Part shown: positions 21,062-63,711 of the stretch, piece by piece
Layout of the letters: the number at the start of each line of letters is the position of its first letter
Numbering within the stretch: position 1 is the stretch's first letter
IMG/VR virus record: IMGVR_UViG_3300024503_000015
Location: 186,001-250,000 of that record
Direction: 5' to 3' (one strand)
DNA length: 64,000 nucleotides
Position numbers and translations under genes: made by a program
Notes under the pieces: generated by a model
Told to the model about the DNA's origin: nothing
Seen by the model: only the letters and a program-made list of their open reading frames with translations
The model's database searches: none

Positions 21062-21131
21062 TGAATACTCCAAAAAAGACTTTGTATCCAATATTTAGCA
21101 GATAATTTTATAACCTTAATGTAAATAACTG

Positions 21132-53722: not shown

Positions 53723-53797
53723 TGGTCCCGCTACTACGAATCGAACGTAGACTTACTCTTTAGGAGAGAGTCGTTCTATCCATTGAACTATAGCGAG
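53723..53797 (-). tRNA. tRNA-Arg(CCT)
   Basis: Cloverleaf by hand; ACTCT-CT CCT AA-AGAGT; encoded CCA. Confidence 0.88.
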
Positions 53798-53807
53798 GGA
53801 GGGAATT

Positions 53808-53915
53808 TGGTGTGACCGGGAGGGTTCGAACCTCCAAGGACGGCATATCGCCTAGTCCCGACCCACGGAGTGTTTCACAACAGTCCTGGAGCTCTGCCTA
53901 TTCGCTCACGGTCAC
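53808..53915 (-). ncRNA. tRNA-like RNA with expanded anticodon arm (108 nt)
   Basis: Perfect 7-bp acceptor stem, ACCA, D-arm and T-arm; ~41-nt branched insert instead of an anticodon loop; no variable loop. Confidence 0.7.
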
Positions 53916-53946
53916 ATACTAAGTATATAACCTTTTCAGCAGTTTG

Positions 53947-54387
53947 TCAACGGGTTATGAGGTATTCGTAGTTCACTGTGTTGTCGTTTTCTTGCAACAC
54001 ACAGGCACCATTTCTGATATGGAACTTGTAGGCCATTTCAGTTTTTGGGCTAAGTGTTACAAAACGATTAACAGTTGGGAAAAGTTCTTTTATTTGATCC
54101 ACTACACCAAAAAGTAGCTCTGCGGCCGCACCCGGCGCATAACTCCAAATTGTATAGAAGATTGCTGTAGTTGGTTCTGTGGGTGTTTTAGCCAAATCTT
54201 CAACAGTTGTTGGCACAAAATCGTGCAGACTAACACAGACCATTGCACGTGGTTTTTCGCCTTCTACAGTGGTGGCGACAAATCTGCTACCGCTAACACG
54301 AAATTCTTTGGGAATTTCTGGACGTACTGGATCATCCTTGATATAGTCAAGTAATGGATTAGTAGTTTCTCTGATTAATGTTAGCAT
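53947..54387 (-). CDS. GNAT-fold protein resembling the malonyl-CoA decarboxylase C-terminal domain
   Basis: AIFYTIWSY...FVTLSP compared with the MCD AVFYSI...TLSP motifs. Confidence 0.5.
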   Translation of the reverse strand: MLTLIRETTNPLLDYIKDDPVRPEIPKEFRVSGSRFVATTVEGEKPRAMVCVSLHDFVPTTVEDLAKTPTEPTTAIFYTIWSYAPGAAAELLFGVVDQIKELFPTVNRFVTLSPKTEMAYKFHIRNGACVLQENDNTVNYEYLITR

Positions 54388-54425
54388 ATAACTATTTAGC
54401 ATTTAGTGGGCAGATTATGGTGTTA

Positions 54426-54500
54426 TGGTGGTAACGGTGAGATTCGAACTCACACCTTGCTCCGTATGAAGGAGGTGCACGACCATTATGCTACGTTACC
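54426..54500 (-). tRNA. tRNA-Met/Ile2(CAT)
   Basis: Cloverleaf; loop TT CAT AC; CCA. Confidence 0.85.
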
Positions 54501-54502
54501 AG

Positions 54503-54739
54503 ATTATTAGTAAGATGTCCCGAGAGTTTTGGTTTGGGTAAGGCCATCCGACGGTGCGATTCGTCCCTCTCTTTGTCTAGCCCAACATGAAGTTCTTGTA
54601 GTCTCAATCCGCTCACCTTGCACCGGCGCTTGATACATATACTCTACAGCATTAAAGTTTATAACTTCAATTAACAAAAACTTCCGATCTTTGTTAACTC
54701 CTTGCGGATGCTTTTAGAACCTTAACTACTTACTAATAA
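54503..54739 (-). ncRNA. Candidate ~235-nt structured RNA
   Basis: 11-bp terminal stem; GCAA tetraloop; G-U-containing hairpins favour the minus strand. Confidence 0.5.
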
Positions 54740-54741
54740 AA

Positions 54742-55010
54742 GGGGTGGAGAGAGAAAGGCAAGTAATAGACTGGACAATGTACAAGCGGGCTCTATAAAG
54801 ATACCCTTAACAAGTCACAAGGCGCAAAGCACAGGGACCTGTATATTTCCAGTTAGCAACTCACAAAGTCGATTAATATATAGAACTGGTTCACACAAGC
54901 ACGAAACGTTTTCAAGACGTTTTGCCAGTAGTTGATGTTCGGTCTCTATAAGAGATCAAACCTTAGGCATGTAGCCTAAGTCTGTCTATCCTAATCTCCT
55001 TCTCTACTCC
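54742..55010. ncRNA. Candidate ~270-nt structured RNA
   Basis: Terminal 11-bp stem with three G-U pairs on the plus strand; several internal hairpins. Confidence 0.4.
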
Positions 55011-55039
55011 AGGCTCGGGCTTTCGCCTTTGCCAAAACT

Positions 55040-55113
55040 TGGTTGCGGGACCTGGAATCGAACCAGGATCTAGAGCTTATGAGACTCTTGAGTTACCGTT
55101 TCTCTATCCCGCG
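55040..55113 (-). tRNA. tRNA-fMet(CAT)
   Basis: C1:A72 mismatch; CT CAT AA; CCA. Confidence 0.85.
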
Positions 55114-55120
55114 ATAACTT

Positions 55121-55249
55121 TATAGGTGCTCTCTGTTCGACTCGAACGAAACCTGCTGAGCTCCTTATCTTCCTGGCACTTTCGGTGGGTAGTCGACTTA
55201 GCACCTAACTCGTGTTATCCAGTGTAGTTCAGCTCAGAGAGCATTTATA
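55121..55249 (-). ncRNA. Candidate tRNA-like structured RNA (~130 nt)
   Basis: TGCTCTCTG/CAGAGAGCA stem; T-loop TTCGAGT just before the 3' strand; no CCA. Confidence 0.45.
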
Positions 55250-55250
55250 A

Positions 55251-55449
55251 AGTGTCTAGCCACTCCCACCACAGGAGCCCTAAACCGAGCTGTTACTCTG
55301 TCCACTAGCCTTTCCATTTAGACGGTGCTGAGGTCCGCCTTTGTGATTTCTCAAGTCGCTTTAAACAAGCCTTGCGGTAGATCCAATGCACCGAGCCATT
55401 AAGGTGTAGCAATTACCTAACTCTATCACGCTGAGTTAACGCGGGGTCT
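55251..55449 (-). ncRNA. Candidate ~200-nt multi-hairpin RNA
   Basis: Non-coding; hairpins TAACTC/GAGTTA, AGGT/ACCT, CC-GCAA-GG, GGCGG/CCGTC and CTCC/GGAG. Confidence 0.4.
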
Positions 55450-55450
55450 G

Positions 55451-56023
55451 TTACAGTAAACCTTCTGCTTGCAGAACTGCTTCTGTTTTGTCAGACAATT
55501 GGATAGTTGTCTGAACATTTAACTCTAGGATTTCATCCTGAAGTTTTTGTTTCTGCTTTTTAGCAGTTGCCACTCTACGACGGAATCCGTCTAGATCTTC
55601 ACGAGTGAGCACACTAGTGTCTACTGTGTCGTTGTAGCCATAGATGCTACGACGGTTTTCGCTTTTGTCGTTACGGATCTTGTCCAAACGACCTGCTACA
55701 ACCTTTGCGCTTTCGCGAACGGTCTTACTAGCCAATCCGTTGTAGAATTGGATTTGTTTTTCTAGATGTGCAACATCGGCCAATCTAGTGTCGATTCTAA
55801 CTTCTGTGTTAGCACCGCTGACACTTTTACGAATCTCGTAAAGTGCTTCCACTAACGCATCTCTGCGTGTAAGGTTGTCGCAGAGTGTTCCTGCAACTTT
55901 GGAAATTTCTTGTTCCGCTTCTTGGAACTCGTTGATTTTTACTGTGGTCTCAAACTGGAAACCTTTGACGGTATCGTTGATACTGTTCTGAAGTGCATTT
56001 GCCTTACGTAGGGAGATATTCAT
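55451..56023 (-). CDS. Coiled-coil hypothetical protein inside the tRNA array
   Basis: Start refined to MNISLRKA (AAGGA SD); 190 aa, helical. Confidence 0.7.
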   Translation of the reverse strand: MNISLRKANALQNSINDTVKGFQFETTVKINEFQEAEQEISKVAGTLCDNLTRRDALVEALYEIRKSVSGANTEVRIDTRLADVAHLEKQIQFYNGLASKTVRESAKVVAGRLDKIRNDKSENRRSIYGYNDTVDTSVLTREDLDGFRRRVATAKKQKQKLQDEILELNVQTTIQLSDKTEAVLQAEGLL

Positions 56024-56089
56024 TTGTTTTTCCTTTAATGTTTCTATTATACAATCTTTTAAATCTAAATCAATGCCTTTTGGCAAAAC

Positions 56090-56165
56090 TGGAGCGGGAG
56101 ACGAGGTTCGAACTCGCGACATTTACCTTGGCAAGGTAATGCTCTACCAACTGAGCTACTCCCGC
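56090..56165 (-). tRNA. tRNA-Gly(GCC)
   Basis: Canonical cloverleaf; U73; CCA. Confidence 0.95.
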
Positions 56166-56213
56166 ATATGAAGAACCTAAGGCAAAGTTTATAACTTATC
56201 CAAAGGCCATATA

Positions 56214-56289
56214 TGGTACACGGTACGGGAATCGAACCCGTCTTACTGACGTGAAAGGCCAGTGTCCTAAACCGATAGACGAACCGTGC
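56214..56289 (-). tRNA. tRNA-Glu(TTC)
   Basis: Canonical cloverleaf; CCA. Confidence 0.93.
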
Positions 56290-56295
56290 ATTACT

Positions 56296-56371
56296 TGGCT
56301 CCCCAGGGTGGGATCGAACCACCGACACCCTGATTAACAGTCAGGTGCTACTACCGCTGAGCTACTAGGGA
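56296..56371 (-). tRNA. tRNA-Asn(GTT)
   Basis: Cloverleaf; G73; CCA. Confidence 0.93.
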
Positions 56372-56378
56372 ATAAACT

Positions 56379-56453
56379 TGGTACCTGGTGACAGTTTCGA
56401 ACTGCCGACCCTCTCGGTGTAAACGAGACGCTCTACCACTGAGCTAACCAGGC
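56379..56453 (-). tRNA. tRNA-Val(TAC)
   Basis: Canonical cloverleaf; CCA. Confidence 0.93.
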
Positions 56454-56463
56454 AAACTAACAT

Positions 56464-56540
<77 letters not shown>

Positions 56541-56545
56541 AATGA

Positions 56546-56621
56546 TGGAGCGGGAGGCGAGAGTTGAACTCGTCTATTTCAGTTTGGAAGACTGACGTGT
56601 AACCACAAACACTTCACCCGC
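56546..56621 (-). tRNA. tRNA-Gly(TCC)
   Basis: Cloverleaf; U73; CCA. Confidence 0.9.
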
Positions 56622-56627
56622 ATATTT

Positions 56628-56711
56628 TGGTGCCCCAGGAGAGACTCGAACTCTCACGGCTCTCGCCACTGGCTTCTAAGACCAGCGTGTCTACCATTCC
56701 ACCACCAGGGC
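56628..56711 (-). tRNA. tRNA-Leu(TAG)
   Basis: Class II with long variable arm; CCA. Confidence 0.92.
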
Positions 56712-56712
56712 A

Positions 56713-57516
56713 TTAACTGACAATACTATTTAAGTATTCCTGAATTGTCGTTGCAATTTTTTCTTGCACAGACAATTTAATTTTTGCATTCTCACCATTA
56801 GCACTCATATACTGTTTTCCGTATTCAGTACAATCTATACCAGTGTGCATAAACTCTTTAAAAATTTCTGAGTTGTCAGGATTAGGATCTCCAAACCTAA
56901 CAGTCGTCCATTTAATATTTTGAGAATCTAAAAACTTAATTAACATATTGTAACCATTTCTATGTCTACGAATATGCCAATCTTTGCTTTGACTTTTTTG
57001 AAAAGCAATACCGTTTAATCGCTTTTTATGAACTTCAATTGGATATCTATCTGGATTCCATTCTCCGTCTACATAATTTTCACGTTCAAATACATATCGT
57101 TGATTGTTATATTTGAAACTGTGTGCTATATGACTAAACGTGTAATCTGTAACTAATACATGATCCGGTTTAGGATTCTCTGCTAGGTACTGTTTTAATC
57201 TTTTGTGATGACCTATAAAATGTCCACCGTTAATAGATATATTAACTACATTGGAAACATTTAAGAAATTAGGCCATGCGGCTTTTTGTTCTTCTTCCCA
57301 TAGATAATGCCAAACAACATTTTCCATATTGCCATTGGGCATAGGTGTTGTAACATTGTTTTCTTTTCTATGTTTTAGATACCATTTAAAAACACTTCTA
57401 AAATCATTATGGAAACGTAGACTCCAAGTCCTCGGAGCATCGTCGTTGACTATGTCACCAGCCAAACAATTATTGCCATTACTTTGGCAATCTCCTAAAA
57501 TTAAAAGTGTTTTCAT
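56713..57516 (-). CDS. Hypothetical protein with SGNH-like N-terminus inside the tRNA array
   Basis: LLILGDCQS N-terminal block; 267 aa; more AT-rich than the flanking tRNAs. Confidence 0.65.
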   Translation of the reverse strand: MKTLLILGDCQSNGNNCLAGDIVNDDAPRTWSLRFHNDFRSVFKWYLKHRKENNVTTPMPNGNMENVVWHYLWEEEQKAAWPNFLNVSNVVNISINGGHFIGHHKRLKQYLAENPKPDHVLVTDYTFSHIAHSFKYNNQRYVFERENYVDGEWNPDRYPIEVHKKRLNGIAFQKSQSKDWHIRRHRNGYNMLIKFLDSQNIKWTTVRFGDPNPDNSEIFKEFMHTGIDCTEYGKQYMSANGENAKIKLSVQEKIATTIQEYLNSIVS

Positions 57517-57530
57517 ATTAATAGTTATCT

Positions 57531-57607
57531 TGGCGCACCGTAGGGGACTTGAACCCCTGGCCTCCGACGTGACAGGCCGGCGCTCTGACCAACTGAGCTA
57601 ACGGTGC
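57531..57607 (-). tRNA. tRNA-Asp(GTC)
   Basis: Canonical; G73; CCA. Confidence 0.95.
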
Positions 57608-57612
57608 AAATT

Positions 57613-57692
57613 CTATTCTGAAACACACTAACCAACTACCAGAAGCATTTATAATGCCGTTATTCGGTTCGAGCTAATGTGTTTTAGAATAG
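57613..57692 (-). ncRNA. Candidate small stem-closed RNA
   Basis: ~19-bp terminal stem with one A-C mismatch. Confidence 0.35.
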
Positions 57693-58572
57693 TGCTAACG
57701 CTGAGATTATACGTTAGCCAATAGTGCCTCTAGCATTATAGTCAGCCTTGCGAGCCAACCTTCTCTAGACATCCACATAAGCCATTACTGTACCTATGTC
57801 CACTATCAGCATCGCCGTTTTTAAAGACAGGCAGTAGTCTTGTCGCCATATGCTATTCTACGCTATCTACTCCGTTGACCTTGCGAGCCATTCAGCGGCG
57901 CTAACCACTTACGAAACTTCCAGCATAAACAGATTTCACCTTGCGAGCTACGTCTGACTCGATTACCTTGCGGCTCGAGTATTAGATGCTTTTCACATAT
58001 GACCGAGGCAGTCTTTGCATTTTATAATCGATAGTTGGGATCGAACCAACAGTCCATTGCTTAAGAGGCAATTGCGTTACCATTACGCTATATCAAACCT
58101 ACCGCGATGAGCTGCCTCTGTTGCTCAATAACCTTTTGGATTACTGAATACAACTCACCACATACCTTTTGTCTCGCGGACTACTCAGTGATATTTCACG
58201 ATCAATGTCCTGCATCAAAACAGTCCACTAACCATTAATATTGCATACAAGCCCTTAGGAGCGACCCCTTGGACAAATACACTACCCTTTCTCATACCAA
58301 TTCGCAAGTTGGTTTTGTTAGGAAGTCAGCACCACCCGTTACTTTTCATGCACCCTGGTTCCCTTGCGGGCCAGTCGATACACATTCTTTCCCTAACACT
58401 TGCTTCATTGTTACATCCACCGGTCTTCTCAGTGAACGCTACCTCGCGGTAGTGAGCAGGCTTGTTTACATGAACCATTACTGGCGGAGTTGCGTAGGCT
58501 TACCTCCTTTGGGTTGATCACTCAACTTATTCTTCGTCAACGGCGAACCGCCAACAGGATAATAAACTACCC
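57692..58572 (-). ncRNA. GOLLD-like giant ornate RNA (~880 nt)
   Basis: No credible ORF; five C(GCAA)G, three GCGA and one UUCG tetraloops on the minus strand; embedded tRNA; located in a tRNA array. Confidence 0.65.
58027..58097 (-). tRNA. tRNA-Lys(CTT)-like module embedded in the giant RNA (no CCA)
   Basis: GCGT/ACGC D-stem; ATTGC-CT CTT AA-GCAAT; GTTGG-TTCGATC-CCAAC; 6-bp acceptor stem; enclosed by GAGGCAG/CTGCCTC. Confidence 0.75.
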
Positions 58573-58582
58573 TTAAATTTTT

Positions 58583-58751
58583 ACCATTAAAAAATAACAT
58601 TACACCCTATGGGATGAAACGTATTTCTGAGTGGAGTTCGATTCTCCTCATAAGCCATTGTTCACGGTTTTCTCAGAAGGGTAAGATGGCCTTATCCTTC
58701 ATAAGTCTATGCGTCCATAGACGATACCCGTCAATGCTATTTCTTAATGGT
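58583..58751 (-). ncRNA. Stem-closed RNA whose 5' strand starts in the ACCA of tRNA-Tyr
   Basis: 19-bp stem (58733-58751 with 58583-58601) including two G-U pairs on the minus strand. Confidence 0.45.
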
Positions 58752-58833
58752 GGATGCGGCTGGAGTCGAACCAGCAGTGCCGTAAGGCGGCGGATTTACA
58801 GTCCACTGGGGTTACCAATTTTCCTACACATCC
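58748..58833 (-). tRNA. tRNA-Tyr(GTA)
   Basis: Class II cloverleaf; CCA. Confidence 0.92.
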
Positions 58834-58884
58834 ATATCTGCTTGAAATTTTTAAAGAACTAGGTTAATTTCTTAACTAGTCTCT

Positions 58885-58913
58885 ATTGTATATGAACTTT
58901 AGAAACTAGTCAA
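58885..58913 (-). promoter_or_regulatory. Internal sigma70-type promoter
   Basis: TTGACT-17 nt-TACAAT upstream of tRNA-Tyr and the giant RNA. Confidence 0.6.
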
Positions 58914-58920
58914 GACATTT

Positions 58921-59015
58921 TGGCAGTGAGTAAGGGATTCGAACCCTTGATCCCCGTTTTTGCAGGAATGCCTTCTTAGCAGGAAGGTGCCTTCGACCAG
59001 CTCGGCCAACTCACT
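58921..59015 (-). tRNA. tRNA-Ser(GCT)
   Basis: Class II; G73; CCA. Confidence 0.9.
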
Positions 59016-59023
59016 ATATTTGT

Positions 59024-59052
59024 ATTATACGATCAACTGTTAAACAAGTCAA
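59024..59052 (-). promoter_or_regulatory. Internal sigma70-type promoter
   Basis: TTGACT-17 nt-TATAAT upstream of tRNA-Ser(GCT). Confidence 0.65.
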
Positions 59053-59059
59053 CACCTTT

Positions 59060-59149
59060 TGGCCGAAGCGGTGAGATTCGAACTCACGGACCCTTTCGGA
59101 TCGTCTGTTTTCAAGACAGGTGCAATAAACCGGACTCTGCCACGCTTCG
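59060..59149 (-). tRNA. tRNA-Ser(TGA)
   Basis: Class II; G73; CCA. Confidence 0.92.
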
Positions 59150-59195
59150 TTGTTTTACTTGTATAATTCGTTGTAGATAGAATCTGCTACAAATG

Positions 59196-59273
59196 TGGTA
59201 CCCCTGCTCCGATTCGAACGGAGAGAACTTCTCCTTTTGAGAGAGACGACTTTACCAATTTGTCCACAGGGGT
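59196..59273 (-). tRNA. tRNA-Leu(CAA), short variable loop
   Basis: TCTCT-CT CAA AA-GGAGA; 6-nt variable region; CCA. Confidence 0.85.
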
Positions 59274-59278
59274 ATATC

Positions 59279-59352
59279 TGGTGCTCAAGGAAAGAATCGA
59301 ACTTTCGATTGTGTCGTACCAAGACACTGGTATACCATTTACCTACAAGAGC
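59279..59352 (-). tRNA. tRNA-Thr(GGT)
   Basis: Cloverleaf with two U-U mismatches in the acceptor stem; CCA. Confidence 0.8.
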
Positions 59353-59354
59353 CT

Positions 59355-59426
59355 TGGCGCCTCTGAGTAGATTCGAACTACTATAACCTGGTTTAGAAGA
59401 CCTGGCACTGCTCCATCAGCAGAGGC
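59355..59426 (-). tRNA. tRNA-Arg(TCT), degenerate D-arm
   Basis: CAGGT-CT TCT AA-ACCAG (4 of 5 bp); perfect acceptor and T-arm; CCA. Confidence 0.65.
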
Positions 59427-59427
59427 A

Positions 59428-59504
59428 TGGTACCCTTGGTTGGATTCGAACCTACACACAACGGATTTTAAATCCATTCGCATTACCAATTAGCGTACAA
59501 GGGC
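59428..59504 (-). tRNA. tRNA-Leu(TAA), short variable loop
   Basis: ATGGA-TT TAA AA-TCCGT; 5-nt variable region; CCA. Confidence 0.85.
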
Positions 59505-59511
59505 ATAATTA

Positions 59512-59587
59512 TGGTGCCGCCCCTTGGGATCGAACCAAGTTCCTCGGTGCTTCAAACCGGTGCAATGACCACATTTGCTAAAGCGGC
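59512..59587 (-). tRNA. tRNA-Phe(GAA)
   Basis: Cloverleaf; CCA. Confidence 0.9.
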
Positions 59588-59593
59588 GATATT

Positions 59594-59668
59594 TGGGGTG
59601 AAGCCGGGAATCGAACCCTGCCTTACTGTTTCACAGACAGCCGTGCGGACCACTACACTAGCAACACC
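59594..59668 (-). tRNA. tRNA-His(GTG)
   Basis: G-1:C73; anticodon GTG; imperfect acceptor and T-stem. Confidence 0.8.
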
Positions 59669-59670
59669 AT

Positions 59671-59747
59671 TGGCCGGCCCTGAGAGACTCGAACTCCCAA
59701 CCTCCAGTTTCGAAGACTGGCACTCTAATCCATTGAGTTAAGGACCG
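59671..59747 (-). tRNA. tRNA-Arg(TCG)
   Basis: CCAGT-CT TCG AA-ACTGG; CCA. Confidence 0.88.
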
Positions 59748-59754
59748 TTAAAAT

Positions 59755-59828
59755 TGGCAGGCCTACCAGGACTCGAACCTGGAACGACTGAGTCAAAGTC
59801 AGTTGTGTTACCATTACACCATAGGCCA
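59755..59828 (-). tRNA. tRNA-Gln(TTG)
   Basis: Unpaired 1-72; G73; CT TTG AC; CCA. Confidence 0.9.
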
Positions 59829-59838
59829 ACAGATTGAA

Positions 59839-60051
59839 TTTGTAAGTAGTTGCCCCATCGTTATAGCAACCATTCACCCATGTATATAAAGCCGGCTGGG
59901 ACTCGGTACGTCACTTGGGATACTAGTCCAGTTAGCAACCAATCTGCAGGGATCTTCCGATCCCCCGGGAGTTGAACCCGTCCCCTTTTACTATTAAGGT
60001 AGTTCGAACTTACCTACAATAGCGTGACATTCTCTTGCTGACACTTACAAA
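59839..60051 (-). ncRNA. YrlA/Y-RNA-like RNA with a circularly permuted tRNA domain
   Basis: Order T-arm (CGGG-TTCAACT-CCCG), 7-bp acceptor-like hairpin capped by GGAA, D-like arm with TGG, all inside a long terminal stem (TTTGTAAGT/ACTTACAAA). Confidence 0.6.
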
Positions 60052-60054
60052 ACT

Positions 60055-60129
60055 TGGTGCCCCAGGATGGAATCGAACCACCACACCCTGCTTACAAAAC
60101 AGGACCTCTACCACTAAGGATACAAGGGC
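60055..60129 (-). tRNA. tRNA-Thr(TGT)
   Basis: Cloverleaf; CCA. Confidence 0.9.
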
Positions 60130-60134
60130 AAAAT

Positions 60135-60212
60135 TGGTCTCCACGGTACGATTCGAACGTACAGCCTCCTGACTCCAGATCAGGCCGTCTACCAGATTGA
60201 CATTACGCAGAG
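60135..60212 (-). tRNA. Non-canonical tRNA-Pro(TGG)
   Basis: C1-G72, A73; anticodon loop TC TGG AG (C33, A37); CCA. Confidence 0.65.
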
Positions 60213-60222
60213 ATAAAAATAA

Positions 60223-60298
60223 TTGCGACCGAAGGACTCGAACCTTCGCGGTAATCTAGAATGCCCCGGCAAGGCCGGTTAACCCACCATTGTCGCAA
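60223..60298 (-). ncRNA. tRNA-like remnant without CCA or a normal anticodon arm
   Basis: TTGCGAC/GTCGCAA stem; GAAGG-TTCGAGT-CCTTC T-arm; CCGGC-CTT-GCCGG hairpin. Confidence 0.5.
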
Positions 60299-60301
60299 AT
60301 T

Positions 60302-60376
60302 TGGTGGAGGCCGAGGAAATCGAATCCTTCTAGACATCTTCCTTGCAAGGGAAGACCGTAGCCCACTACTGCCCCC
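60302..60376 (-). tRNA. tRNA-Ala(TGC), minimal D-arm
   Basis: G3-U70; CT TGC AA; D-arm GTAG-TGGG-CTAC; CCA. Confidence 0.8.
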
Positions 60377-60380
60377 AAAT

Positions 60381-60416
60381 TGGTGTTAGTTTCTATACCA
60401 CCCATTGAAACTAACA
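60381..60416 (-). ncRNA. CCA-terminated minihelix candidate
   Basis: TGTTAGTTTC-13 nt-GAAACTAACA-CCA. Confidence 0.35.
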
Positions 60417-60461
60417 AACATTGAGAGAACATGGATGAACCCACAAGATCTCTATTTGCTC

Positions 60462-60536
60462 TGGTATAGCGTACGGGGATCGAACCCGCCTAGTCACCTT
60501 GAAAGGGTGATGACCTCCCCAGAAGTCGAACGCTAT
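60462..60536 (-). tRNA. tRNA-Glu(TTC), second divergent copy
   Basis: TCACC-CT TTC AA-GGTGA; CCA. Confidence 0.82.
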
Positions 60537-60542
60537 GTAAAT

Positions 60543-60616
60543 TGGTTCCTGGACCGAGAATTGAACTCAGAATGACCGGTTATCAGCCGATTGTTATACC
60601 ATTTAACTATCCAGGA
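60543..60616 (-). tRNA. tRNA-Ile(GAT)
   Basis: Cloverleaf; CCA. Confidence 0.92.
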
Positions 60617-60625
60617 ATAATACTA

Positions 60626-60701
60626 TACAAAAAGAAACTAACGACAATGCGCTATGCACCCAGAGTCTATAGTTCCTGGCTGTGGTTAGTTTGTTTTTAT
60701 A
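60626..60701 (-). ncRNA. Candidate small stem-closed RNA
   Basis: 17-position terminal stem with one C-C mismatch; inner CCAGG/TCTGG and GC-ATA-GC hairpins. Confidence 0.35.
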
Positions 60702-60703
60702 CA

Positions 60704-60804
60704 CTACCATATGGAAGCACTCTTATGCCTTTTTCGTCATAAGATGGTGGCCCGTCCTTACTACTGACGCTATGCGACCAGTTAAGAATGCTTTCATATG
60801 GTAG
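60704..60804 (-). ncRNA. Stem-closed RNA whose 5' strand includes the CTACCA end of tRNA-Lys(TTT)
   Basis: 22-position stem with one A-C mismatch and one G-U pair. Confidence 0.45.
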
Positions 60805-60873
60805 GGGCACAGAGAATCGAACTCTGATTTACGGGTTAAAAGCCCGCTACTTTAACCATTAAGTTATACCCCC
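60799..60873 (-). tRNA. tRNA-Lys(TTT)
   Basis: Cloverleaf; CCA. Confidence 0.92.
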
Positions 60874-60876
60874 ATA

Positions 60877-60952
60877 TGGTCCCTGCTGTGAGATTCGAAC
60901 TCACACCTCATTGATTAAGAGTCAAGTGCGCTACCATTGACGCTAAACAGGG
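60877..60952 (-). tRNA. tRNA-Lys(CTT)
   Basis: Cloverleaf; CCA. Confidence 0.9.
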
Positions 60953-61014
60953 TTGTACGTATTGATTTGATTTTACGTGCCAACCCTAGACCATACGGGA
61001 GATCTAGAGTGACA

Positions 61015-61035
61015 CTAACGTTTAGCACGTTTCAT
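61015..61035 (-). CDS. Micro-ORF MKRAKR ending in TAG, followed by a long hairpin
   Basis: AAGGAGAG SD 4 nt before ATG; ATG AAA CGT GCT AAA CGT TAG. Confidence 0.5.
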   Translation of the reverse strand: MKRAKR

Positions 61036-61047
61036 GCTACTCTCCTT

Positions 61048-61110
61048 TTAATATTTTTTCAAAACTTGATACAACACGAACATTATAACTAACACTACAA
61101 GTACTGCCAT
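61048..61110 (-). CDS. 20-aa hydrophobic peptide
   Basis: AAGGAGA SD; MAVLVVLVIMFVLYQVLKKY. Confidence 0.55.
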   Translation of the reverse strand: MAVLVVLVIMFVLYQVLKKY

Positions 61111-61123
61111 AATATTCTCCTTA

Positions 61124-61213
61124 TGGTCCCCCGTTGAGGAATCGAACCTCATCCTGGACCTTATCTAGATTAATCGGTTATAAGCCGACCTGCTCTCCAT
61201 GAGCTAACGGGGG
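61124..61213 (-). tRNA. tRNA-Ile(TAT) with enlarged variable region
   Basis: GTCGG-CT TAT AA-CCGAT; 21-nt variable region; perfect acceptor and T-arm; CCA. Confidence 0.75.
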
Positions 61214-61221
61214 ATATAACC

Positions 61222-61299
61222 TGGAGCAACGGGTCAGATTTGAACTGACGGTTTTACGGATTTGCAATCCGTTGCATTGGGCCTCTCTGCCACCGTTGC
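61222..61299 (-). tRNA. tRNA-Cys(GCA)
   Basis: U73; TT GCA AA; CCA. Confidence 0.92.
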
Positions 61300-61304
61300 A
61301 TTAT

Positions 61305-61379
61305 TGGCGTACCCCCAGGGACTCGAACCCCGACTAGCAGTTTTGGAGACTGTCGTGCTGCCATTAACACTAGGGATAC
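61305..61379 (-). tRNA. tRNA-Trp(CCA)
   Basis: G73; CT CCA AA; CCA end. Confidence 0.92.
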
Positions 61380-61400
61380 ATAACACTCTCTTTCGAAAGT

Positions 61401-61466
61401 GTGTATTAAAGCATACTACTCATCGGCTACTGCCATTTGATTGTTCGGCAGTATGCTTTAATACGC
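61401..61466 (-). ncRNA. Long hairpin element
   Basis: GTATTAAAGCATACT/AGTATGCTTTAATAC 15-bp perfect stem; alternative TACTGCC/GGCAGTA pairing. Confidence 0.4.
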
Positions 61467-61579
61467 TACCTTTTTACACATTCTAGTTATCGCCTAGAAC
61501 TTACCATCCGGTAGGCCGCCCACATTAAGCCCATGTTTTACGTGCAGGCAGGGTCGCGTTCCCTATAACACGTTTGAGA

Positions 61580-61750
61580 TTAGTCTTGCTCTACGAGCTC
61601 AACTTCTCTCTTGTAAAGTGCTGTGTGATAAGCACGAGCACGATTAAACTTTTCTTCGATGAGTTTTTCAAAAGCATCGTCGTCCAGTTCATGCTCACTT
61701 AGCACTTTGGCACTTTTCTGTTTTCTAAAATCTTCAAAATTCATTTTCAT
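61580..61750 (-). CDS. 56-aa charged helical protein, first gene after the attenuator
   Basis: Hand translation MKMNFEDFRKQKSAKVLSEHELDDDAFEKLIEEKFNRARAYHTALYKREVELVEQD. Confidence 0.6.
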   Translation of the reverse strand: MKMNFEDFRKQKSAKVLSEHELDDDAFEKLIEEKFNRARAYHTALYKREVELVEQD

Positions 61751-61763
61751 TTCCAAATCTTAC

Positions 61764-61800
61764 AAAACAAAAAACCCTGGGTTTTTAGTCCAGGGTTCTT
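61764..61800 (-). terminator. Intrinsic terminator (attenuator) upstream of the tRNA array
   Basis: AAGAACCCTGG-ACTAAAAAC-CCAGGGTTTTT followed by TGTTTT. Confidence 0.85.
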
Positions 61801-61852
61801 AAAAGTTATTGTGTATGTTACTGTTAACTTACACGATCCTCCAAGAACCCTA
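61791..61852 (-). promoter_or_regulatory. Antiterminator hairpin mutually exclusive with the terminator
   Basis: TAGGGTTCTTGGAGG pairs at all 15 positions (including G-U) with CTTTTAAGAACCCTG; inner GTGTA.GTTA/TAAC.TACAC hairpin covers the leader stop codon. Confidence 0.75.
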
Positions 61853-61985
61853 CGATAATCTCAGGTGTACGATCATTACCTAGACCTAGCCCGACATTAC
61901 TAAACTGTGACCAATAGGCGGACATACATGCCGGCGCTTTGGCTTGTTTAGATATCGTTTGTCTATGTAAACTAATCGTTTGCAT
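61824..61985 (-). CDS. 53-aa leader peptide containing all 20 amino acids
   Basis: Hand translation MQTISLHRQTISKQAKAPACMSAYWSQFSNVGLGLGNDRTPEIIVGFLEDRVS; its last codons form the antiterminator. Confidence 0.7.
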   Translation of the reverse strand: MQTISLHRQTISKQAKAPACMSAYWSQFSNVGLGLGNDRTPEIIVGFLEDRVS

Positions 61986-62043
61986 TTTGTTTCTCTTTTT
62001 CTTACCTTCTTAAAAGTTGTAGCGGAATTGCTACTGTCTTTGT

Positions 62044-62072
62044 ATTGTAATGCCTTTCAACATCTTTGTCAA
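62044..62072 (-). promoter_or_regulatory. sigma70-type promoter P2 of the tRNA operon
   Basis: TTGACA-17 nt-TACAAT. Confidence 0.7.
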
Positions 62073-62136
62073 CATCTTTTTGTCTTTTTTGGACAACCTA
62101 ATGTTTTGTGGAAAGTGATTGCTTTACAATATTTGT

Positions 62137-62165
62137 ATTATATGAGTATTTATAAAACTTGTCAA
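62137..62165 (-). promoter_or_regulatory. sigma70-type promoter P1 with an embedded TATAAATA late motif
   Basis: TTGACA-AGTTTTATAAATACTCA-TATAAT. Confidence 0.75.
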
Positions 62166-62222
62166 TACCTATGTTGAAATGTGGCGATTTTGCAACATTT
62201 TGAAAACCGCCACACTTTTGTA

Positions 62223-62741
62223 TTAACCGTTTAGTACTTTTGCTAGACTATTGATCACTGCGGCAATACGTCCGATGTCACGAAGTTGTTCTACGGTGTA
62301 GCCTTCCTTCTTCAATGTTTCGTAGTGCGCCTTAACACAGAAATGACACTTGCCAACAATACTTGCGGCAAGACTGTATGCTTCAAAGCGAGCCTTGGTA
62401 GTTCCGCCATGGCTTGCGATAGCGTTCATGCGTAACTGTGCTGGCAAGCCCTTTAGTTGCTCATCGTCTGCCATCTCAACATATGGATACCAAACGTTGT
62501 TCTGTGCCATAATTGAACCAGCGGTCATCGCGGCATCACGTTCTTTTTCGTCTGTGATGTTGCTCATGATGAAACTAATCAATTTTCCATTGCCGGTGCT
62601 CATAGCCGCGGCCAATGCACAACCTTCTGCTTCTACAACATCTGATAGTGTACTACGCTTGATTACTGCATCCAGATTTAGTTTTGTGTCCTTGGCGTAT
62701 TCTGGTAAACCTTCTTTTAATTGATCAACCCATTGTGTCAT
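62223..62741 (-). CDS. ahpD: Alkylhydroperoxidase reductase AhpD
   Basis: LPEYAKDTKLNL, MAQNNVWY and SIVGKCHFCVKAH (CxxC); downstream of ahpC. Confidence 0.9.
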   Translation of the reverse strand: MTQWVDQLKEGLPEYAKDTKLNLDAVIKRSTLSDVVEAEGCALAAAMSTGNGKLISFIMSNITDEKERDAAMTAGSIMAQNNVWYPYVEMADDEQLKGLPAQLRMNAIASHGGTTKARFEAYSLAASIVGKCHFCVKAHYETLKKEGYTVEQLRDIGRIAAVINSLAKVLNG

Positions 62742-63160
62742 AGTGTGTCTCCTTTAGTTGCTTTGGCTATGCTTTTATAGCCTTTGTAAGTTGGGTGTAC
62801 GTGATCCGGGCTAGTTTCGTGCTTTCTAGCATCTATTACAAAGTCCTTGTATTTTTCTGCTACTGCAAGAACTGCCCGTCTCTTATCGTCCTTGATATTA
62901 GGTACAATCCAATAAACACGAGTGGCGTCTACTAGTTGTCTTAGACTGTCTAGTTCCTCCACTGTGTTTATTTTTGCTGTATCGTTTGACCCTAGACTAA
63001 TGATTACATTTTTTGCCTGTGTAGTGCCCTGAGTGTGTAACACATGACGATTAACATAGTCATAACTGTTAATGCCACTCTTAGCACGAGTAACACATTC
63101 TGTACGAACTTGTCCTACTCCTACTGCTAGGCTATCGCCTAGGATTAAACAATCAAGCAT
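62738..63160 (-). CDS. SGNH/GDSL hydrolase
   Basis: ILGDSL, SLGSND and DHVHP blocks. Confidence 0.85.
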   Translation of the reverse strand: MLDCLILGDSLAVGVGQVRTECVTRAKSGINSYDYVNRHVLHTQGTTQAKNVIISLGSNDTAKINTVEELDSLRQLVDATRVYWIVPNIKDDKRRAVLAVAEKYKDFVIDARKHETSPDHVHPTYKGYKSIAKATKGDTL

Positions 63161-63171
63161 AATTGATCCTA

Positions 63172-63711
63172 TCAAAGAGTTTCGCCGCCTACTGTACGGT
63201 TACAAGCGCACAACTCACCAGTTTGTAGCGCATCAAGAATACGTAAAGTTTCTTCTGGGCTACGACCAACGTTCAAGTTGTTGACAGTAACGTGCTGGAT
63301 AACGTTCTCTGGGTCAACAATAAATGTAGCACGTAGAGCCGCACCTGCTGGAGCATAAAATACACCCAACTGCTCAATCAATGACAACTCGCCACGCTGT
63401 GTGTCTGCAAATTGTGTATGTGTAATTTTCTGTAAGTCTGGGTGTGCTTTTTGCCATGCGATTTTACAAAACTCGTTATCTGTGCTACCTGTTAGCAATA
63501 CTGCGTCACGGTCAGCAAAGTCACCTGCTAGTTTATCGTAGGCTACAATCTCTGTAGGGCAAACGAATGTGAAGTCCTTTGGGTAGTAAACGATTACTTT
63601 CCACTTGCCAGCAAAACTTTCATCTGTAATGTCAAAGAAAGCATCTTCTGGTTGTCCTGGCTTAACACCAGTAATTGCGAATTTTTCTAATTTATGTCCA
63701 ACTGTTTTCAT
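63172..63711 (-). CDS. ahpC: Peroxiredoxin AhpC
   Basis: YYPKDFTFVCPTE, RATFIVDP, VGRS and GELCACN motifs. Confidence 0.95.
   Translation of the reverse strand: MKTVGHKLEKFAITGVKPGQPEDAFFDITDESFAGKWKVIVYYPKDFTFVCPTEIVAYDKLAGDFADRDAVLLTGSTDNEFCKIAWQKAHPDLQKITHTQFADTQRGELSLIEQLGVFYAPAGAALRATFIVDPENVIQHVTVNNLNVGRSPEETLRILDALQTGELCACNRTVGGETL

What the first reader, a model, noticed from the sequence alone, without database searches (positions are those of the whole stretch)
61760..61985. Ribosome-coupled attenuator with an all-20-amino-acid leader peptide gating the phage tRNA array
Seen: downstream of two sigma70 promoters lies a 53-codon ORF (MQTISLHRQTISKQAKAPACMSAYWSQFSNVGLGLGNDRTPEIIVGFLEDRVS). 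It contains all 20 amino acids by codon 42 and 36 different sense codons, including ACG, CCG, GCG, ATA, AGA, CTA and GGG. Codons 45-50 (TAGGGTTCTTGGAGG) pair at 15 of 15 positions with the 5' arm of a strong intrinsic terminator, and an inner hairpin buries the stop codon. Terminator and antiterminator are mutually exclusive. The tRNA array that follows also covers all 20 amino acids. Established: classical attenuators (trpL, hisL) use leaders enriched for one amino acid. Inference: a ribosome that reaches the last codons melts the antiterminator, so transcription stops. A stall anywhere in codons 1-~42 (any depleted, uncharged or nuclease-cleaved tRNA) lets the antiterminator form and switches on the phage tRNAs. 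This would be a general translation-distress sensor that could counter host tRNA-targeting defences. Caveat: internal promoters at 58885-58913 and 59024-59052 could drive the distal array independently.
Basis: partly seen in the sequence, partly recalled or inferred. Interest (0 to 1): 0.92.

Follow-up and report, generated by a model that had tools for sequence, protein, structure and literature searches.

The report
All-amino-acid leader switch before phage tRNAs
At the head of this giant phage's tRNA gene array lies a conserved short gene that nearly always uses all 20 amino acids and whose end overlaps an on/off RNA switch, so it probably turns the phage tRNAs up when protein synthesis slows, a control logic I could not find described.

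Summary
On the minus strand, two near-consensus sigma-70 promoters precede a 53-codon ORF (61985-61824). It reaches all 20 amino acids at codon 42. Its last codons form a -24 to -26 kcal/mol three-tier hairpin that shares about 10 nt with the 5' arm of an intrinsic terminator. The error: the window's array covers 19 amino acids (no tRNA-Ala).

Comparative evidence is strong:
- More than 100 related loci keep the ORF intact, with the stop codon inside the inner hairpin.
- Antiterminator and terminator show compensatory changes, including three-way ones.
- Same-strand tRNAs follow wherever I checked.
- All-20 content: 38/38 close relatives, 106/120 database homologues, and 34/45 leaders in a sample picked by the downstream RNA alone. 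Other small ORFs of that size: 14/453.
- Tree-aware simulations give P <= 0.006.

Best reading: a ribosome-mediated transcription attenuator that reports overall elongation capacity. The sensing function, direction and physiology are inferred, not shown. Internal promoters mean it can gate only the proximal array. No prior description was found in four full-text searches.

The parts
62137..62165 (-). Promoter P1, TTGACA-17-TATAAT
   Evidence: 12/12 consensus matches. Both hexamers are conserved in diverged relatives.
62044..62072 (-). Promoter P2, TTGACA-17-TACAAT
   Evidence: 11/12 matches. The TTGACA and TACAAT columns are invariant in alignment A1.
62019..62034 (-). Small 5'-UTR hairpin just after the P2 start site
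   Evidence: Seen as a 6-bp palindromic stem and in the fold. It is conserved in the close group only. Its role is unknown.
61993..61997 (-). Weak Shine-Dalgarno-like AAGAG in an A-rich leader, 8 nt before the ATG
   Evidence: It resembles the AAGGAGAAACAA-ATG ribosome-binding site of the AhpC-like gene. The second sequence group has no good Shine-Dalgarno sequence.
61824..61985 (-). Leader ORF: 53 codons plus TAA, all 20 amino acids reached by codon 42
   Evidence: It is intact in 79 loci giving 38 distinct peptides, and all indels are multiples of 3. There are 243 database homologues.
61838..61852 (-). 5' arm of the antiterminator (stems P1 and P2), inside codons 45-50
   Evidence: Folds. 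Compensatory changes.
61811..61834 (-). Inner hairpin P3 of the antiterminator, holding the stop codon (61826-61824)
   Evidence: At least 8 different P3 sequences all form a helix with the stop codon inside it.
61791..61805 (-). 3' arm of the antiterminator; 61800-61791 is also the 5' arm of the terminator (shared segment)
   Evidence: Three-way covariation.
61763..61800 (-). Intrinsic terminator: 11-bp stem, 9-nt loop, T-run TTTTTTGTTTTG
   Evidence: RNAfold gives -15.1 kcal/mol. The consensus scan missed it because it allows loops of at most 8 nt. Compensatory pairs are listed.
61580..61750 (-). Small ORF (54-58 codons by start choice; 55 aa tested) after the terminator, function unknown
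   Evidence: It is conserved in part of the family and replaced by other small ORFs or absent elsewhere. No Pfam or PHROG match.
61383..61568 (-). Conserved multi-hairpin RNA of unknown function between the attenuator and the first tRNA
   Evidence: 49 predicted pairs, 15 with compensatory changes in 6 sequences. No Rfam family. Its 16-mer is found in about 70 AT-rich viral contigs, always upstream of tRNAs.
53723..61379 (-). tRNA array: 31 tRNAs for 19 amino acids (no Ala), with a GOLLD RNA and small ORFs inside it
   Evidence: Internal promoter-like sites at 61110-61082, 59052-59024, 58913-58885 and 56073-56046.

Best explanation
This is a ribosome-mediated (leader-peptide) transcription attenuator at the head of the phage tRNA array.

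Proposed mechanism:
1. Transcripts start at two strong promoters and run into a 53-codon leader ORF.
2. The last 8-9 codons of the ORF, plus about 30 nt after it, fold into a three-tier hairpin (P1-P2-P3, with the stop codon in P3). The 3' arm of this hairpin is the 5' arm of an intrinsic terminator.
3. If no ribosome has reached about codon 41 when the polymerase makes the terminator, the more stable hairpin forms first. The terminator cannot form, and transcription continues into the small ORF, the structured RNA and the tRNAs.
4. If a ribosome keeps pace and sits on codons about 42-53 or on the stop codon, it covers the hairpin's 5' arm. The shared segment is then free, the terminator forms and transcription stops.

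The leader is selected to contain every amino acid, including an internal Met, and the set is nearly always complete before the hairpin begins. Total transit time would therefore depend on the supply of all 20 kinds of charged tRNA. The element would then work as a general gauge of elongation capacity with negative feedback: slow translation raises phage tRNA output, and fast translation lowers it.

Shown here: the anatomy, its conservation, the covariation, the linkage to tRNA arrays, and the selection for amino-acid completeness.
Inferred: that the ORF is translated, the direction of the switch, its kinetics, and the physiological signal.
For: Anatomy:
- The antiterminator (-24.5 to -26.3 kcal/mol) and the terminator (-15.1) share 61800-61791. 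The minimum-energy fold of the full leader is the antiterminator.
- Masking a 27-nt ribosome footprint gives the antiterminator when the P site is at codon 40 or earlier, a mixed state at 42, and the full terminator at 45 or later.

The ORF is real:
- It is intact in 79 loci, and all indels are multiples of 3.
- The stop codon always lies 23-28 nt after the start of P1, inside P3, although the C-terminal residues vary.
- Gene callers predicted it in 243 database clusters.

The structure is selected:
- Native hairpins average -24.1 kcal/mol against -17.6 for chimeras of one locus's 5' half with another's 3' half. Only 52 of 1062 chimeras are as stable as the native hairpin. The z-score against shuffled 3' halves is -6.4.
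- An ungapped, anchored pair table shows one P1 position as U-A (6) or C-G (30), paired in 36/36. Another is A-U (16), G-C (17) or G.U (1).
- The terminator partner covaries with the same shared base: combinations GGGG/CCCC/GGGG (17), AGGG/CCCU/AGGG (16) and the wobble intermediate (1).
- Very divergent loci use other P1 sequences (GGGGUCUGU/ACAGACCCC, GGGUUCAG/CUGAACCC) with the same overlap.

Linkage to tRNAs:
- All 12 ORF-defined loci scanned have same-strand tRNAs downstream. Eleven start 450-1140 nt after the leader stop; the twelfth, L013, ends three tRNAs into its array.
- 46 of 46 loci defined by the downstream RNA do as well.
- The scan finds no promoter-like site between the terminator and the first tRNA in the window.

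All-20 is selected:
- 38/38 close relatives have all 20, as do 106/120 database homologues; the other 14 each lack one type.
- Simulations that keep the tree and the site profiles give P = 0.001-0.004 (38 leaves) and P <= 0.006 (120 leaves).
- In a sample chosen without reference to the ORF, 34/45 leaders have all 20. This includes 8/13 leaders that the family HMM no longer recognises.
- Controls: 14/453 other 43-54-aa ORFs in the same loci; 1.7-8% for random draws from the leaders' own pooled composition.
- 125/140 have all 20 without counting the initiator Met. 119/140 complete the set before the P1 Gly codon.
Against: - There is no experimental evidence for translation, termination or read-through.
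- The ribosome-binding site is weak in this group and poor in the second group.
- Each residue type is usually present only once or a few times. Sensitivity to partial starvation for one amino acid should therefore be low compared with trpL or hisL.
- Close relatives keep peptide motifs (LHRQ, YWS, NDRTPE) and invariant synonymous sites that a pure composition sensor does not need.
- Leader codons are no more often decoded by the phage's own tRNAs than codons of ordinary phage genes: 81% against 82%.
- The window has no tRNA-Ala although the leader has four Ala codons.
- 12-24% of leaders lack one or more residue types.
- Internal promoter-like sites could drive most of the array independently. 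In L098, L121 and L134 a near-consensus promoter follows the terminator.
- Glu, usually the last type added, sits at the edge of the sensing window.
Confidence: 0.6

Rival explanations
1. The attenuator is real and ribosome-dependent, but it senses something specific. The conserved motifs (LHRQ, YWS, NDRTPE) would act as an arrest or sensor peptide in the ribosome exit tunnel, as in TnaC, SpeFL or SecM. Alternatively, particular codons would be sensed. Amino-acid completeness would then be a by-product.
For: Invariant residues and invariant synonymous sites in close relatives. NDRTPE sits right at the switch point.
Against: - The spacing between the W and the P of the motifs varies from 9 to 17 residues.
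- The motifs have dissolved in divergent leaders that keep both the RNA switch and all 20 residues.
- All-20 retention exceeds what site-wise conservation predicts.
Confidence: 0.17
2. The RNA switch is set by a trans-acting factor and not by ribosome position. Candidates are a phage or host protein, a small RNA, a tRNA or a metabolite binding the conserved nucleotide blocks. The ORF would be incidental or would encode a separate small protein.
For: Synonymous-site invariance suggests selection at the nucleotide level. A conserved structured RNA of unknown function lies just downstream.
Against: - The reading frame and the stop-codon position relative to the hairpin are conserved across very divergent sequences.
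- There is no Rfam riboswitch or T-box match.
- There is no consensus structure in the N-terminal coding part.
- Amino-acid completeness is a property of the translated product, not of the RNA.
Confidence: 0.1
3. An ordinary small phage protein gene with its own terminator. The long hairpin would be a 3'-end stabiliser or an RNase III-type processing site, and tRNA expression would rely on constitutive leak-through or on other promoters.
For: Internal promoters exist. A promoter follows the terminator in some relatives. Long hairpins are common processing sites (general knowledge).
Against: - The hairpin and the terminator are mutually exclusive, with three-way covariation of the shared base. 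A plain stabiliser would not need that.
- Variable columns change at all three codon positions (83/82/108 changes), so selection on the protein sequence is weak there.
- The scan finds no promoter-like site between the terminator and the first tRNA in the window.
- All-20 retention is unexplained.
Confidence: 0.08
4. All-20 content is an inherited accident of a family whose rare residues happen to sit in conserved positions. There would be no selection for completeness, and the attenuator would respond only to gross loss of translation.
For: Most rare residues (W, Y, H, N, D, P, M) lie in conserved columns of the close family. The simulated null still keeps 40-70% of leaves complete.
Against: - The observed counts exceed the null with P <= 0.006.
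- Residues relocate while the set is kept. Cys and Phe swap positions between the two groups. His7 is lost only where a second His exists. The Asp of NDRTP is lost only where Asp occurs elsewhere.
- Leaders too diverged for the HMM still have all 20 in 43-54 aa in 8 of 13 cases, against 3% for control ORFs.
Confidence: 0.05

Closest known systems
Classical leader-peptide transcription attenuators of amino-acid operons (trpL, hisL, pheL, leuL, thrL, ilvL)
   Same: A short translated leader, an intrinsic terminator, and an alternative hairpin that excludes it. The position of the lead ribosome decides which structure forms, and a stall upstream gives read-through.
   Different: - There is no run of one regulatory codon. 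The leader instead carries all 20 residue types, mostly once to a few times each.
- The design has three segments, and I found no upstream 1:2 hairpin. No translation therefore predicts read-through, not super-attenuation.
- The regulated genes are viral tRNAs and a structured RNA, not biosynthetic enzymes.
Ribosome-stalling attenuators that sense translation inhibitors (ermK-type, bmrB-bmrCD, vmlR, lmo0919; Term-seq class of Dar et al. 2016, cited from my own knowledge; vmlR paper PMC9226507 listed)
   Same: They are general sensors of impaired elongation. A stalled ribosome in a leader ORF favours an antiterminator, and read-through induces a remedy.
   Different: Those respond to drugs and induce resistance genes. 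They are cellular and show no amino-acid completeness. Here the remedy would be tRNA supply, the element is viral, and its composition is under selection.
T-box riboswitches
   Same: They couple the state of the tRNA pool to read-through of a terminator through a competing antiterminator.
   Different: T-boxes bind one specific uncharged tRNA directly and need no ORF. No T-box match was found here, and the frame and stop-codon position are conserved here.
pyrBI / pyrE UTP-sensitive attenuators
   Same: Control rests on the distance between the polymerase and the ribosome that follows it.
   Different: There a closely following ribosome prevents the terminator hairpin. Here a closely following ribosome is predicted to permit it.

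Membership tests
Leader-peptide (ribosome-mediated) transcription attenuator | Short ORF in the 5' leader of the regulated transcription unit | tested here: met
   53-codon ORF 61985-61824 downstream of two promoters. It is conserved as an intact ORF in more than 100 loci.
Leader-peptide (ribosome-mediated) transcription attenuator | Intrinsic terminator between the leader and the regulated genes | tested here: met
   An 11-bp stem plus T-run at 61800-61763. It is conserved with compensatory pairs.
Leader-peptide (ribosome-mediated) transcription attenuator | Alternative structure mutually exclusive with the terminator, supported by covariation | tested here: met
   The shared segment is 61800-61791. 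Supported by the chimera test, the anchored pair table and three-way covariation.
Leader-peptide (ribosome-mediated) transcription attenuator | The ORF overlaps the switch, so ribosome position selects the fold | tested here: met
   Codons 45-50 form the 5' arm, and the stop codon lies in P3 at a constant distance. Footprint-masked folds switch at codon 41-45. This shows anatomy only.
Leader-peptide (ribosome-mediated) transcription attenuator | Read-through depends on leader translation in vivo or in vitro | not testable with these tools
   Needs reporter assays, Term-seq, Ribo-seq or coupled in-vitro assays.
Classical amino-acid operon attenuators (trpL/hisL type) | Tandem or enriched codons for the cognate amino acid in the sensing window | tested here: not met
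   No residue is enriched. The most frequent is Ser (6 of 53, not tandem), and all 20 types are present.
Classical amino-acid operon attenuators (trpL/hisL type) | Four-segment design with an upstream 1:2 pause / anti-antiterminator hairpin | tested here: not met
   There is no conserved structure in the N-terminal coding part (consensus energy -1.5 kcal/mol). Only three interacting segments are present.
T-box riboswitch | Match to the T-box leader model (specifier loop, T-box bulge) | tested here: not met
   The Rfam E-value search of 61350-62250 returned only chance-level hits.
Nascent-peptide arrest sensors (TnaC/SecM/SpeFL type) | Conserved arrest motif at a fixed distance from the stall site | tested here: inconclusive
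   The motifs YWS and NDRTPE are conserved in close relatives. Their spacing varies from 9 to 17 residues, and the motifs are lost in divergent leaders that keep the switch.

The most novel reading that the evidence does not exclude
A clade of uncultivated freshwater large phages controls its tRNA arrays with a 'pan-amino-acid' leader peptide. The leader is a 43-54-codon ORF kept complete for all 20 residue types. Its translation time integrates the supply of every charged tRNA and sets read-through of a terminator into the tRNA genes. This would be a viral homeostat for translation capacity. It would also respond to host tRNA depletion or cleavage.
Probability: 0.5. Interest if true: 0.92.

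Novelty: new variant of a known kind. Interest (0 to 1): 0.87.

Why it matters
Phage tRNA arrays are common, but to my knowledge nothing is known about how they are regulated. Known leader-peptide attenuators each read one amino acid. An attenuator whose leader is selected to contain all twenty would be a new sensing logic: a read-out of overall elongation capacity.

It would give a direct mechanistic link between the state of the host's translation apparatus and viral tRNA supply. Codon mismatch, tRNA degradation during infection and tRNA-targeting defences would all feed into that state.

It is easy to test with reporters, and the compact part could be reused as a sensor of translation stress. 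The analysis also turns up a widespread unknown structured RNA that always sits between the attenuator and the tRNAs.

Tried and rejected
- DNA searches of the GenBank phage collection with the locus and with 24 kb around it found only tRNA matches and no relative.
- Pfam and PHROGs gave nothing for the leader or for the small ORF after the terminator.
- Rfam gave nothing for the leader, the switch or the downstream RNA.
- MAFFT alignments of the switch region (A5, A6, A9) are out of register by one column between the two sequence groups. The RNAalifold pair counts are therefore unreliable, and I did not use them.
  - I replaced them with alignment-free chimera energies and an anchored, ungapped pair table.
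  - I did not build a covariance model, for want of a clean seed alignment.
- The idea that leader codons are matched to the phage's own tRNAs is not supported: 81% against 82% in ordinary genes.
- A conserved RNA structure that would explain the invariant synonymous sites was not found.
- A quick look at 40-kb tRNA regions of two unrelated jumbo phages (Xanthomonas XacN1, Agrobacterium Atu_ph07) found no comparable all-20 ORF followed by a terminator. This was not systematic and says little.
A 7-sequence alignment worked.
- About ten of the 81 matches to the 16-mer are chance hits in GC-rich genomes and were excluded.

Full report
**1. What is in the window**

Everything lies on the minus strand. 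Reading 5' to 3':
- An AhpC-like, a GDSL-like and an AhpD/CMD-like gene occupy 63711-62223.
- Two sigma-70-type promoters follow, at 62165-62137 (12/12 consensus matches) and 62072-62044 (11/12).
- An A-rich leader carries a weak AAGAG ribosome-binding site. It resembles the AAGGAG site of the AhpC-like gene.
- The 53-codon ORF runs from 61985 to 61824.
- A terminator follows: an 11-bp stem (61800-61790 with 61780-61770), a 9-nt loop and the T-run TTTTTTGTTTTG. The consensus scan missed it only because it allows loops of at most 8 nt.
- After the terminator come a 54-58-codon ORF (61580 to 61744, 61750 or 61756, by start choice), a GC-rich conserved segment (about 61568-61383), and the first tRNA (Trp, 61379).
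- ARAGORN finds 31 tRNAs down to 53723.

**2. Check of the observation**

- The peptide, the '20 types by codon 42' and the 36 distinct codons are correct.
- The 15/15 pairing is correct if four G.U pairs are counted. About 10 of the 15 pairs use nucleotides of the terminator stem.
- The hairpin has three tiers. P1 and P2 lie in codons 45-50. P3 (61834-61811) holds the stop codon.
- The hairpin scores -24.5 to -26.3 kcal/mol against -15.1 for the terminator. The minimum-energy fold of the whole leader is the antiterminator.
- The claim that the array covers all 20 amino acids is wrong for this window. ARAGORN and Rfam both find 19, with no tRNA-Ala.
- Judged on the window alone, the all-20 property is unusual but not extraordinary:
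  - 0.2-0.6% of 42-residue stretches have it, and 1.3-2.2% of 53-residue stretches;
  - 5 of 138 other small ORFs in the window have it;
  - 36 distinct codons in 53 has P = 0.01-0.035.

**3. Relatives**

- GenBank phages hold no DNA relative.
- A structural protein is 30-44% identical to proteins of T4-like cyanophages.
- The window matches a 304,615-bp metagenome contig, locus L034.
- Scans of IMG/VR and JGI metagenomes with the peptide gave 79 loci and 38 distinct peptides of 44-54 residues.
- A search of the 5.8-billion-protein collection gave 243 homologues, of which 120 are listed.
- I also drew a sample that does not depend on the ORF. The 16-mer GGGAACGCGACCCTGC from the downstream RNA hits 81 viral contigs (80 were read back from the stored files), of which about 70 are genuine AT-rich phage contexts.
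  - 49 of the 74 loci with enough upstream sequence have a leader recognisable by a family HMM.
  - Most of the rest have a small ORF ending in the same kind of hairpin-terminator pair, but with a peptide the HMM no longer recognises.

**4. The ORF is real**

- It is intact in every locus, and indels are multiples of three.
- The stop codon always lies 23-28 nt after the first P1 base, inside P3, although the C-terminal residues differ.
- Variable columns change at all three codon positions (83/82/108 changes). Selection on the peptide sequence is therefore weak outside a few blocks.

**5. The switch is selected**

- Every sequence folds into the same three-tier hairpin, with at least eight different P3 sequences and several different P2 and P1 sequences.
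- Native hairpins average -24.1 kcal/mol. Chimeras that join the 5' half of one locus to the 3' half of another average -17.6, and only 52 of 1062 reach the native value. The z-score against shuffled 3' halves is -6.4.
- An ungapped pair table, anchored on invariant triplets and so not fitted to any energy model, shows:
  - one P1 position as U-A in 6 sequences and C-G in 30, paired in 36/36;
  - another as A-U (16), G-C (17) or G.U (1);
  - the terminator's partner of that same shared base changing in step, which is three-way covariation;
  - two further compensatory positions in the terminator.
- Very divergent loci use other P1 sequences and keep the overlap with the terminator arm.
- Across full-length sequences the minimum-energy fold flips between the two states, as expected for a bistable switch decided by kinetics.

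**6. Geometry**

- I masked a 27-nt ribosome footprint and refolded the leader.
  - P site at codon 40 or earlier: antiterminator.
  - P site at codon 42: mixed state.
  - P site at codon 45 or later, or at the stop codon: full terminator.
- I estimate from the coordinates that the stop codon lies 24 nt or more upstream of the terminator stem. A terminating ribosome should therefore not cover it.
- The default state without a ribosome is read-through.

**7. Linkage to tRNAs**

- All 12 ORF-defined loci scanned have same-strand tRNAs downstream. Eleven start 450-1140 nt after the leader stop; the twelfth, L013, ends three tRNAs into its array. The order of the tRNAs differs between loci.
- All 46 RNA-defined loci with enough sequence have same-strand tRNAs. 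The median distance is 253 nt, and a median of 13 tRNAs lie within 3.2 kb.
- In the window the scan finds no promoter-like site between the terminator and the first tRNA. The proximal tRNAs therefore seem to depend on read-through.
- Internal promoter-like sites at 61110-61082, 59052-59024, 58913-58885 and further on could drive the rest of the array.

**8. Amino-acid completeness**

- Counts:
  - 38 of 38 close relatives have all 20 types.
  - 106 of 120 database homologues do, and the other 14 each lack exactly one type, most often Cys or Val.
  - In the ORF-independent sample, 34 of 45 distinct leaders have all 20, eight have 19 and three have 15-18. Among the 13 leaders the HMM cannot recognise, eight have all 20 in 43-54 residues.
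- Controls:
  - 14 of 453 other ORFs of 43-54 codons in the same loci have all 20 (3%);
  - random draws from the leaders' own pooled composition give 1.7-8%.
- Tree-aware simulations start from a real complete leaf, keep each column's observed residue profile and number of changes, and keep the gap pattern.
  - All 38 leaves stay complete with P = 0.001-0.004. This also holds with the two Cys/Phe columns frozen.
  - At least 106 of 120 stay complete with P <= 0.006.
- Residues move while the set is kept:
  - Cys and Phe swap positions between the two main groups.
  - His7 is lost only where a second His exists.
  - The Asp of NDRTP is lost only where Asp occurs elsewhere.
- 125 of 140 leaders are complete without counting the initiator Met. 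119 of 140 complete the set before the Gly codon that starts P1. The Glu of NDRTPE is usually the last type added.

**9. What does not fit or is unexplained**

- Close relatives keep peptide motifs, and several synonymous sites are invariant. Examples are TAT TGG and AAT GAT CGY ACA, on a tree of about 5.9 substitutions per site.
  - No conserved RNA structure explains this.
  - Leader codons are not preferentially those read by phage tRNAs.
- Single codons per residue type predict weak sensitivity to mild starvation. The design fits severe depletion, or the summed delay over about 40 codons, better.
- In L098, L121 and L134 a near-consensus promoter lies between the terminator and the downstream RNA.
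- A non-systematic look at two unrelated jumbo phages found nothing similar.

**10. Comparison with what is known**

- The element works like a leader-peptide attenuator, and it meets every anatomical criterion I could test.
- It fails the two criteria that define the classical amino-acid operon type. There is no enrichment of one regulatory codon, and there is no upstream 1:2 hairpin.
- In logic it is closest to the drug-responsive ribosome-stalling attenuators, which are general sensors of elongation trouble. It differs from them in its target, its viral setting and its selected composition.
- It is not a T-box.
- Four full-text searches found no description of an attenuator on a phage tRNA array, or of an amino-acid-complete leader. 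Subscription-only literature was not searched.

**11. Verdict**

- The feature is real and conserved, and it is very probably a regulatory switch read by the ribosome.
- Selection for amino-acid completeness is well supported statistically.
- That it serves as a general sensor of charged-tRNA supply feeding back on viral tRNA output is the most economical reading, but it remains an inference.
- I file it as a new variant of a known kind of system.

Noticed in passing
window 61383-61568 (minus); also L015, L013, L021, L023, L024, L025 and about 70 IMG/VR contigs (L089-L168): A conserved multi-hairpin RNA of about 185 nt lies between the attenuator and the first tRNA. It has 49 predicted pairs, 15 with compensatory changes in six sequences, and no Rfam family. 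Its exact 16-mer GGGAACGCGACCCTGC recurs in about 70 AT-rich viral contigs. Same-strand tRNAs followed it in all 46 loci that could be checked. It may be a new phage ncRNA class tied to tRNA arrays.
   Followed up: partly
window 57698-58161 (minus): A GOLLD RNA (Rfam RF02032, 207 bits against a gathering score of 150) sits inside the tRNA array and encloses tRNA-Lys(ctt) at 58025-58098.
   Followed up: no
window 62223-63711 (minus): An AhpC/peroxiredoxin-like gene, a GDSL-hydrolase-like gene and an AhpD/carboxymuconolactone-decarboxylase-like gene lie in a row just upstream of the promoters. This is an unusual peroxide-defence gene set for a phage.
   Followed up: no
L015 6404-6490 (also L021, L023, L024; absent from the window): A tRNA-like element ending in GGTTCGATTCC...TCCACCA lies between the structured RNA and the first called tRNA. 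ARAGORN does not call it. Rfam gives only a weak tRNA-Sec-like match (26.9 bits, below the gathering score of 47).
   Followed up: partly
L098, L121, L134 (about 60-100 nt upstream of the 16-mer): In these divergent relatives a TTGACA-17-CATAAT promoter sits between the terminator and the structured RNA. There the attenuator cannot be the only gate to the tRNAs.
   Followed up: no
L085 (1254-bp contig), about 330-380: A 15-codon ORF resembles only the middle of the leader (ACMPSYWSQF) and then stops. It may be a decayed copy, or a chance match of the search pattern.
   Followed up: no
window 61402-61462 (minus): A long, nearly perfect inverted repeat (GTATTAAAGCATACTGCC ... AGTATGCTTTAATAC) forms the variable-tip hairpin of the structured RNA, just upstream of tRNA-Trp.
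   Followed up: partly
window 11783-21091 (minus): A 3102-codon ORF, very large for a phage gene. It was not examined.
   Followed up: no
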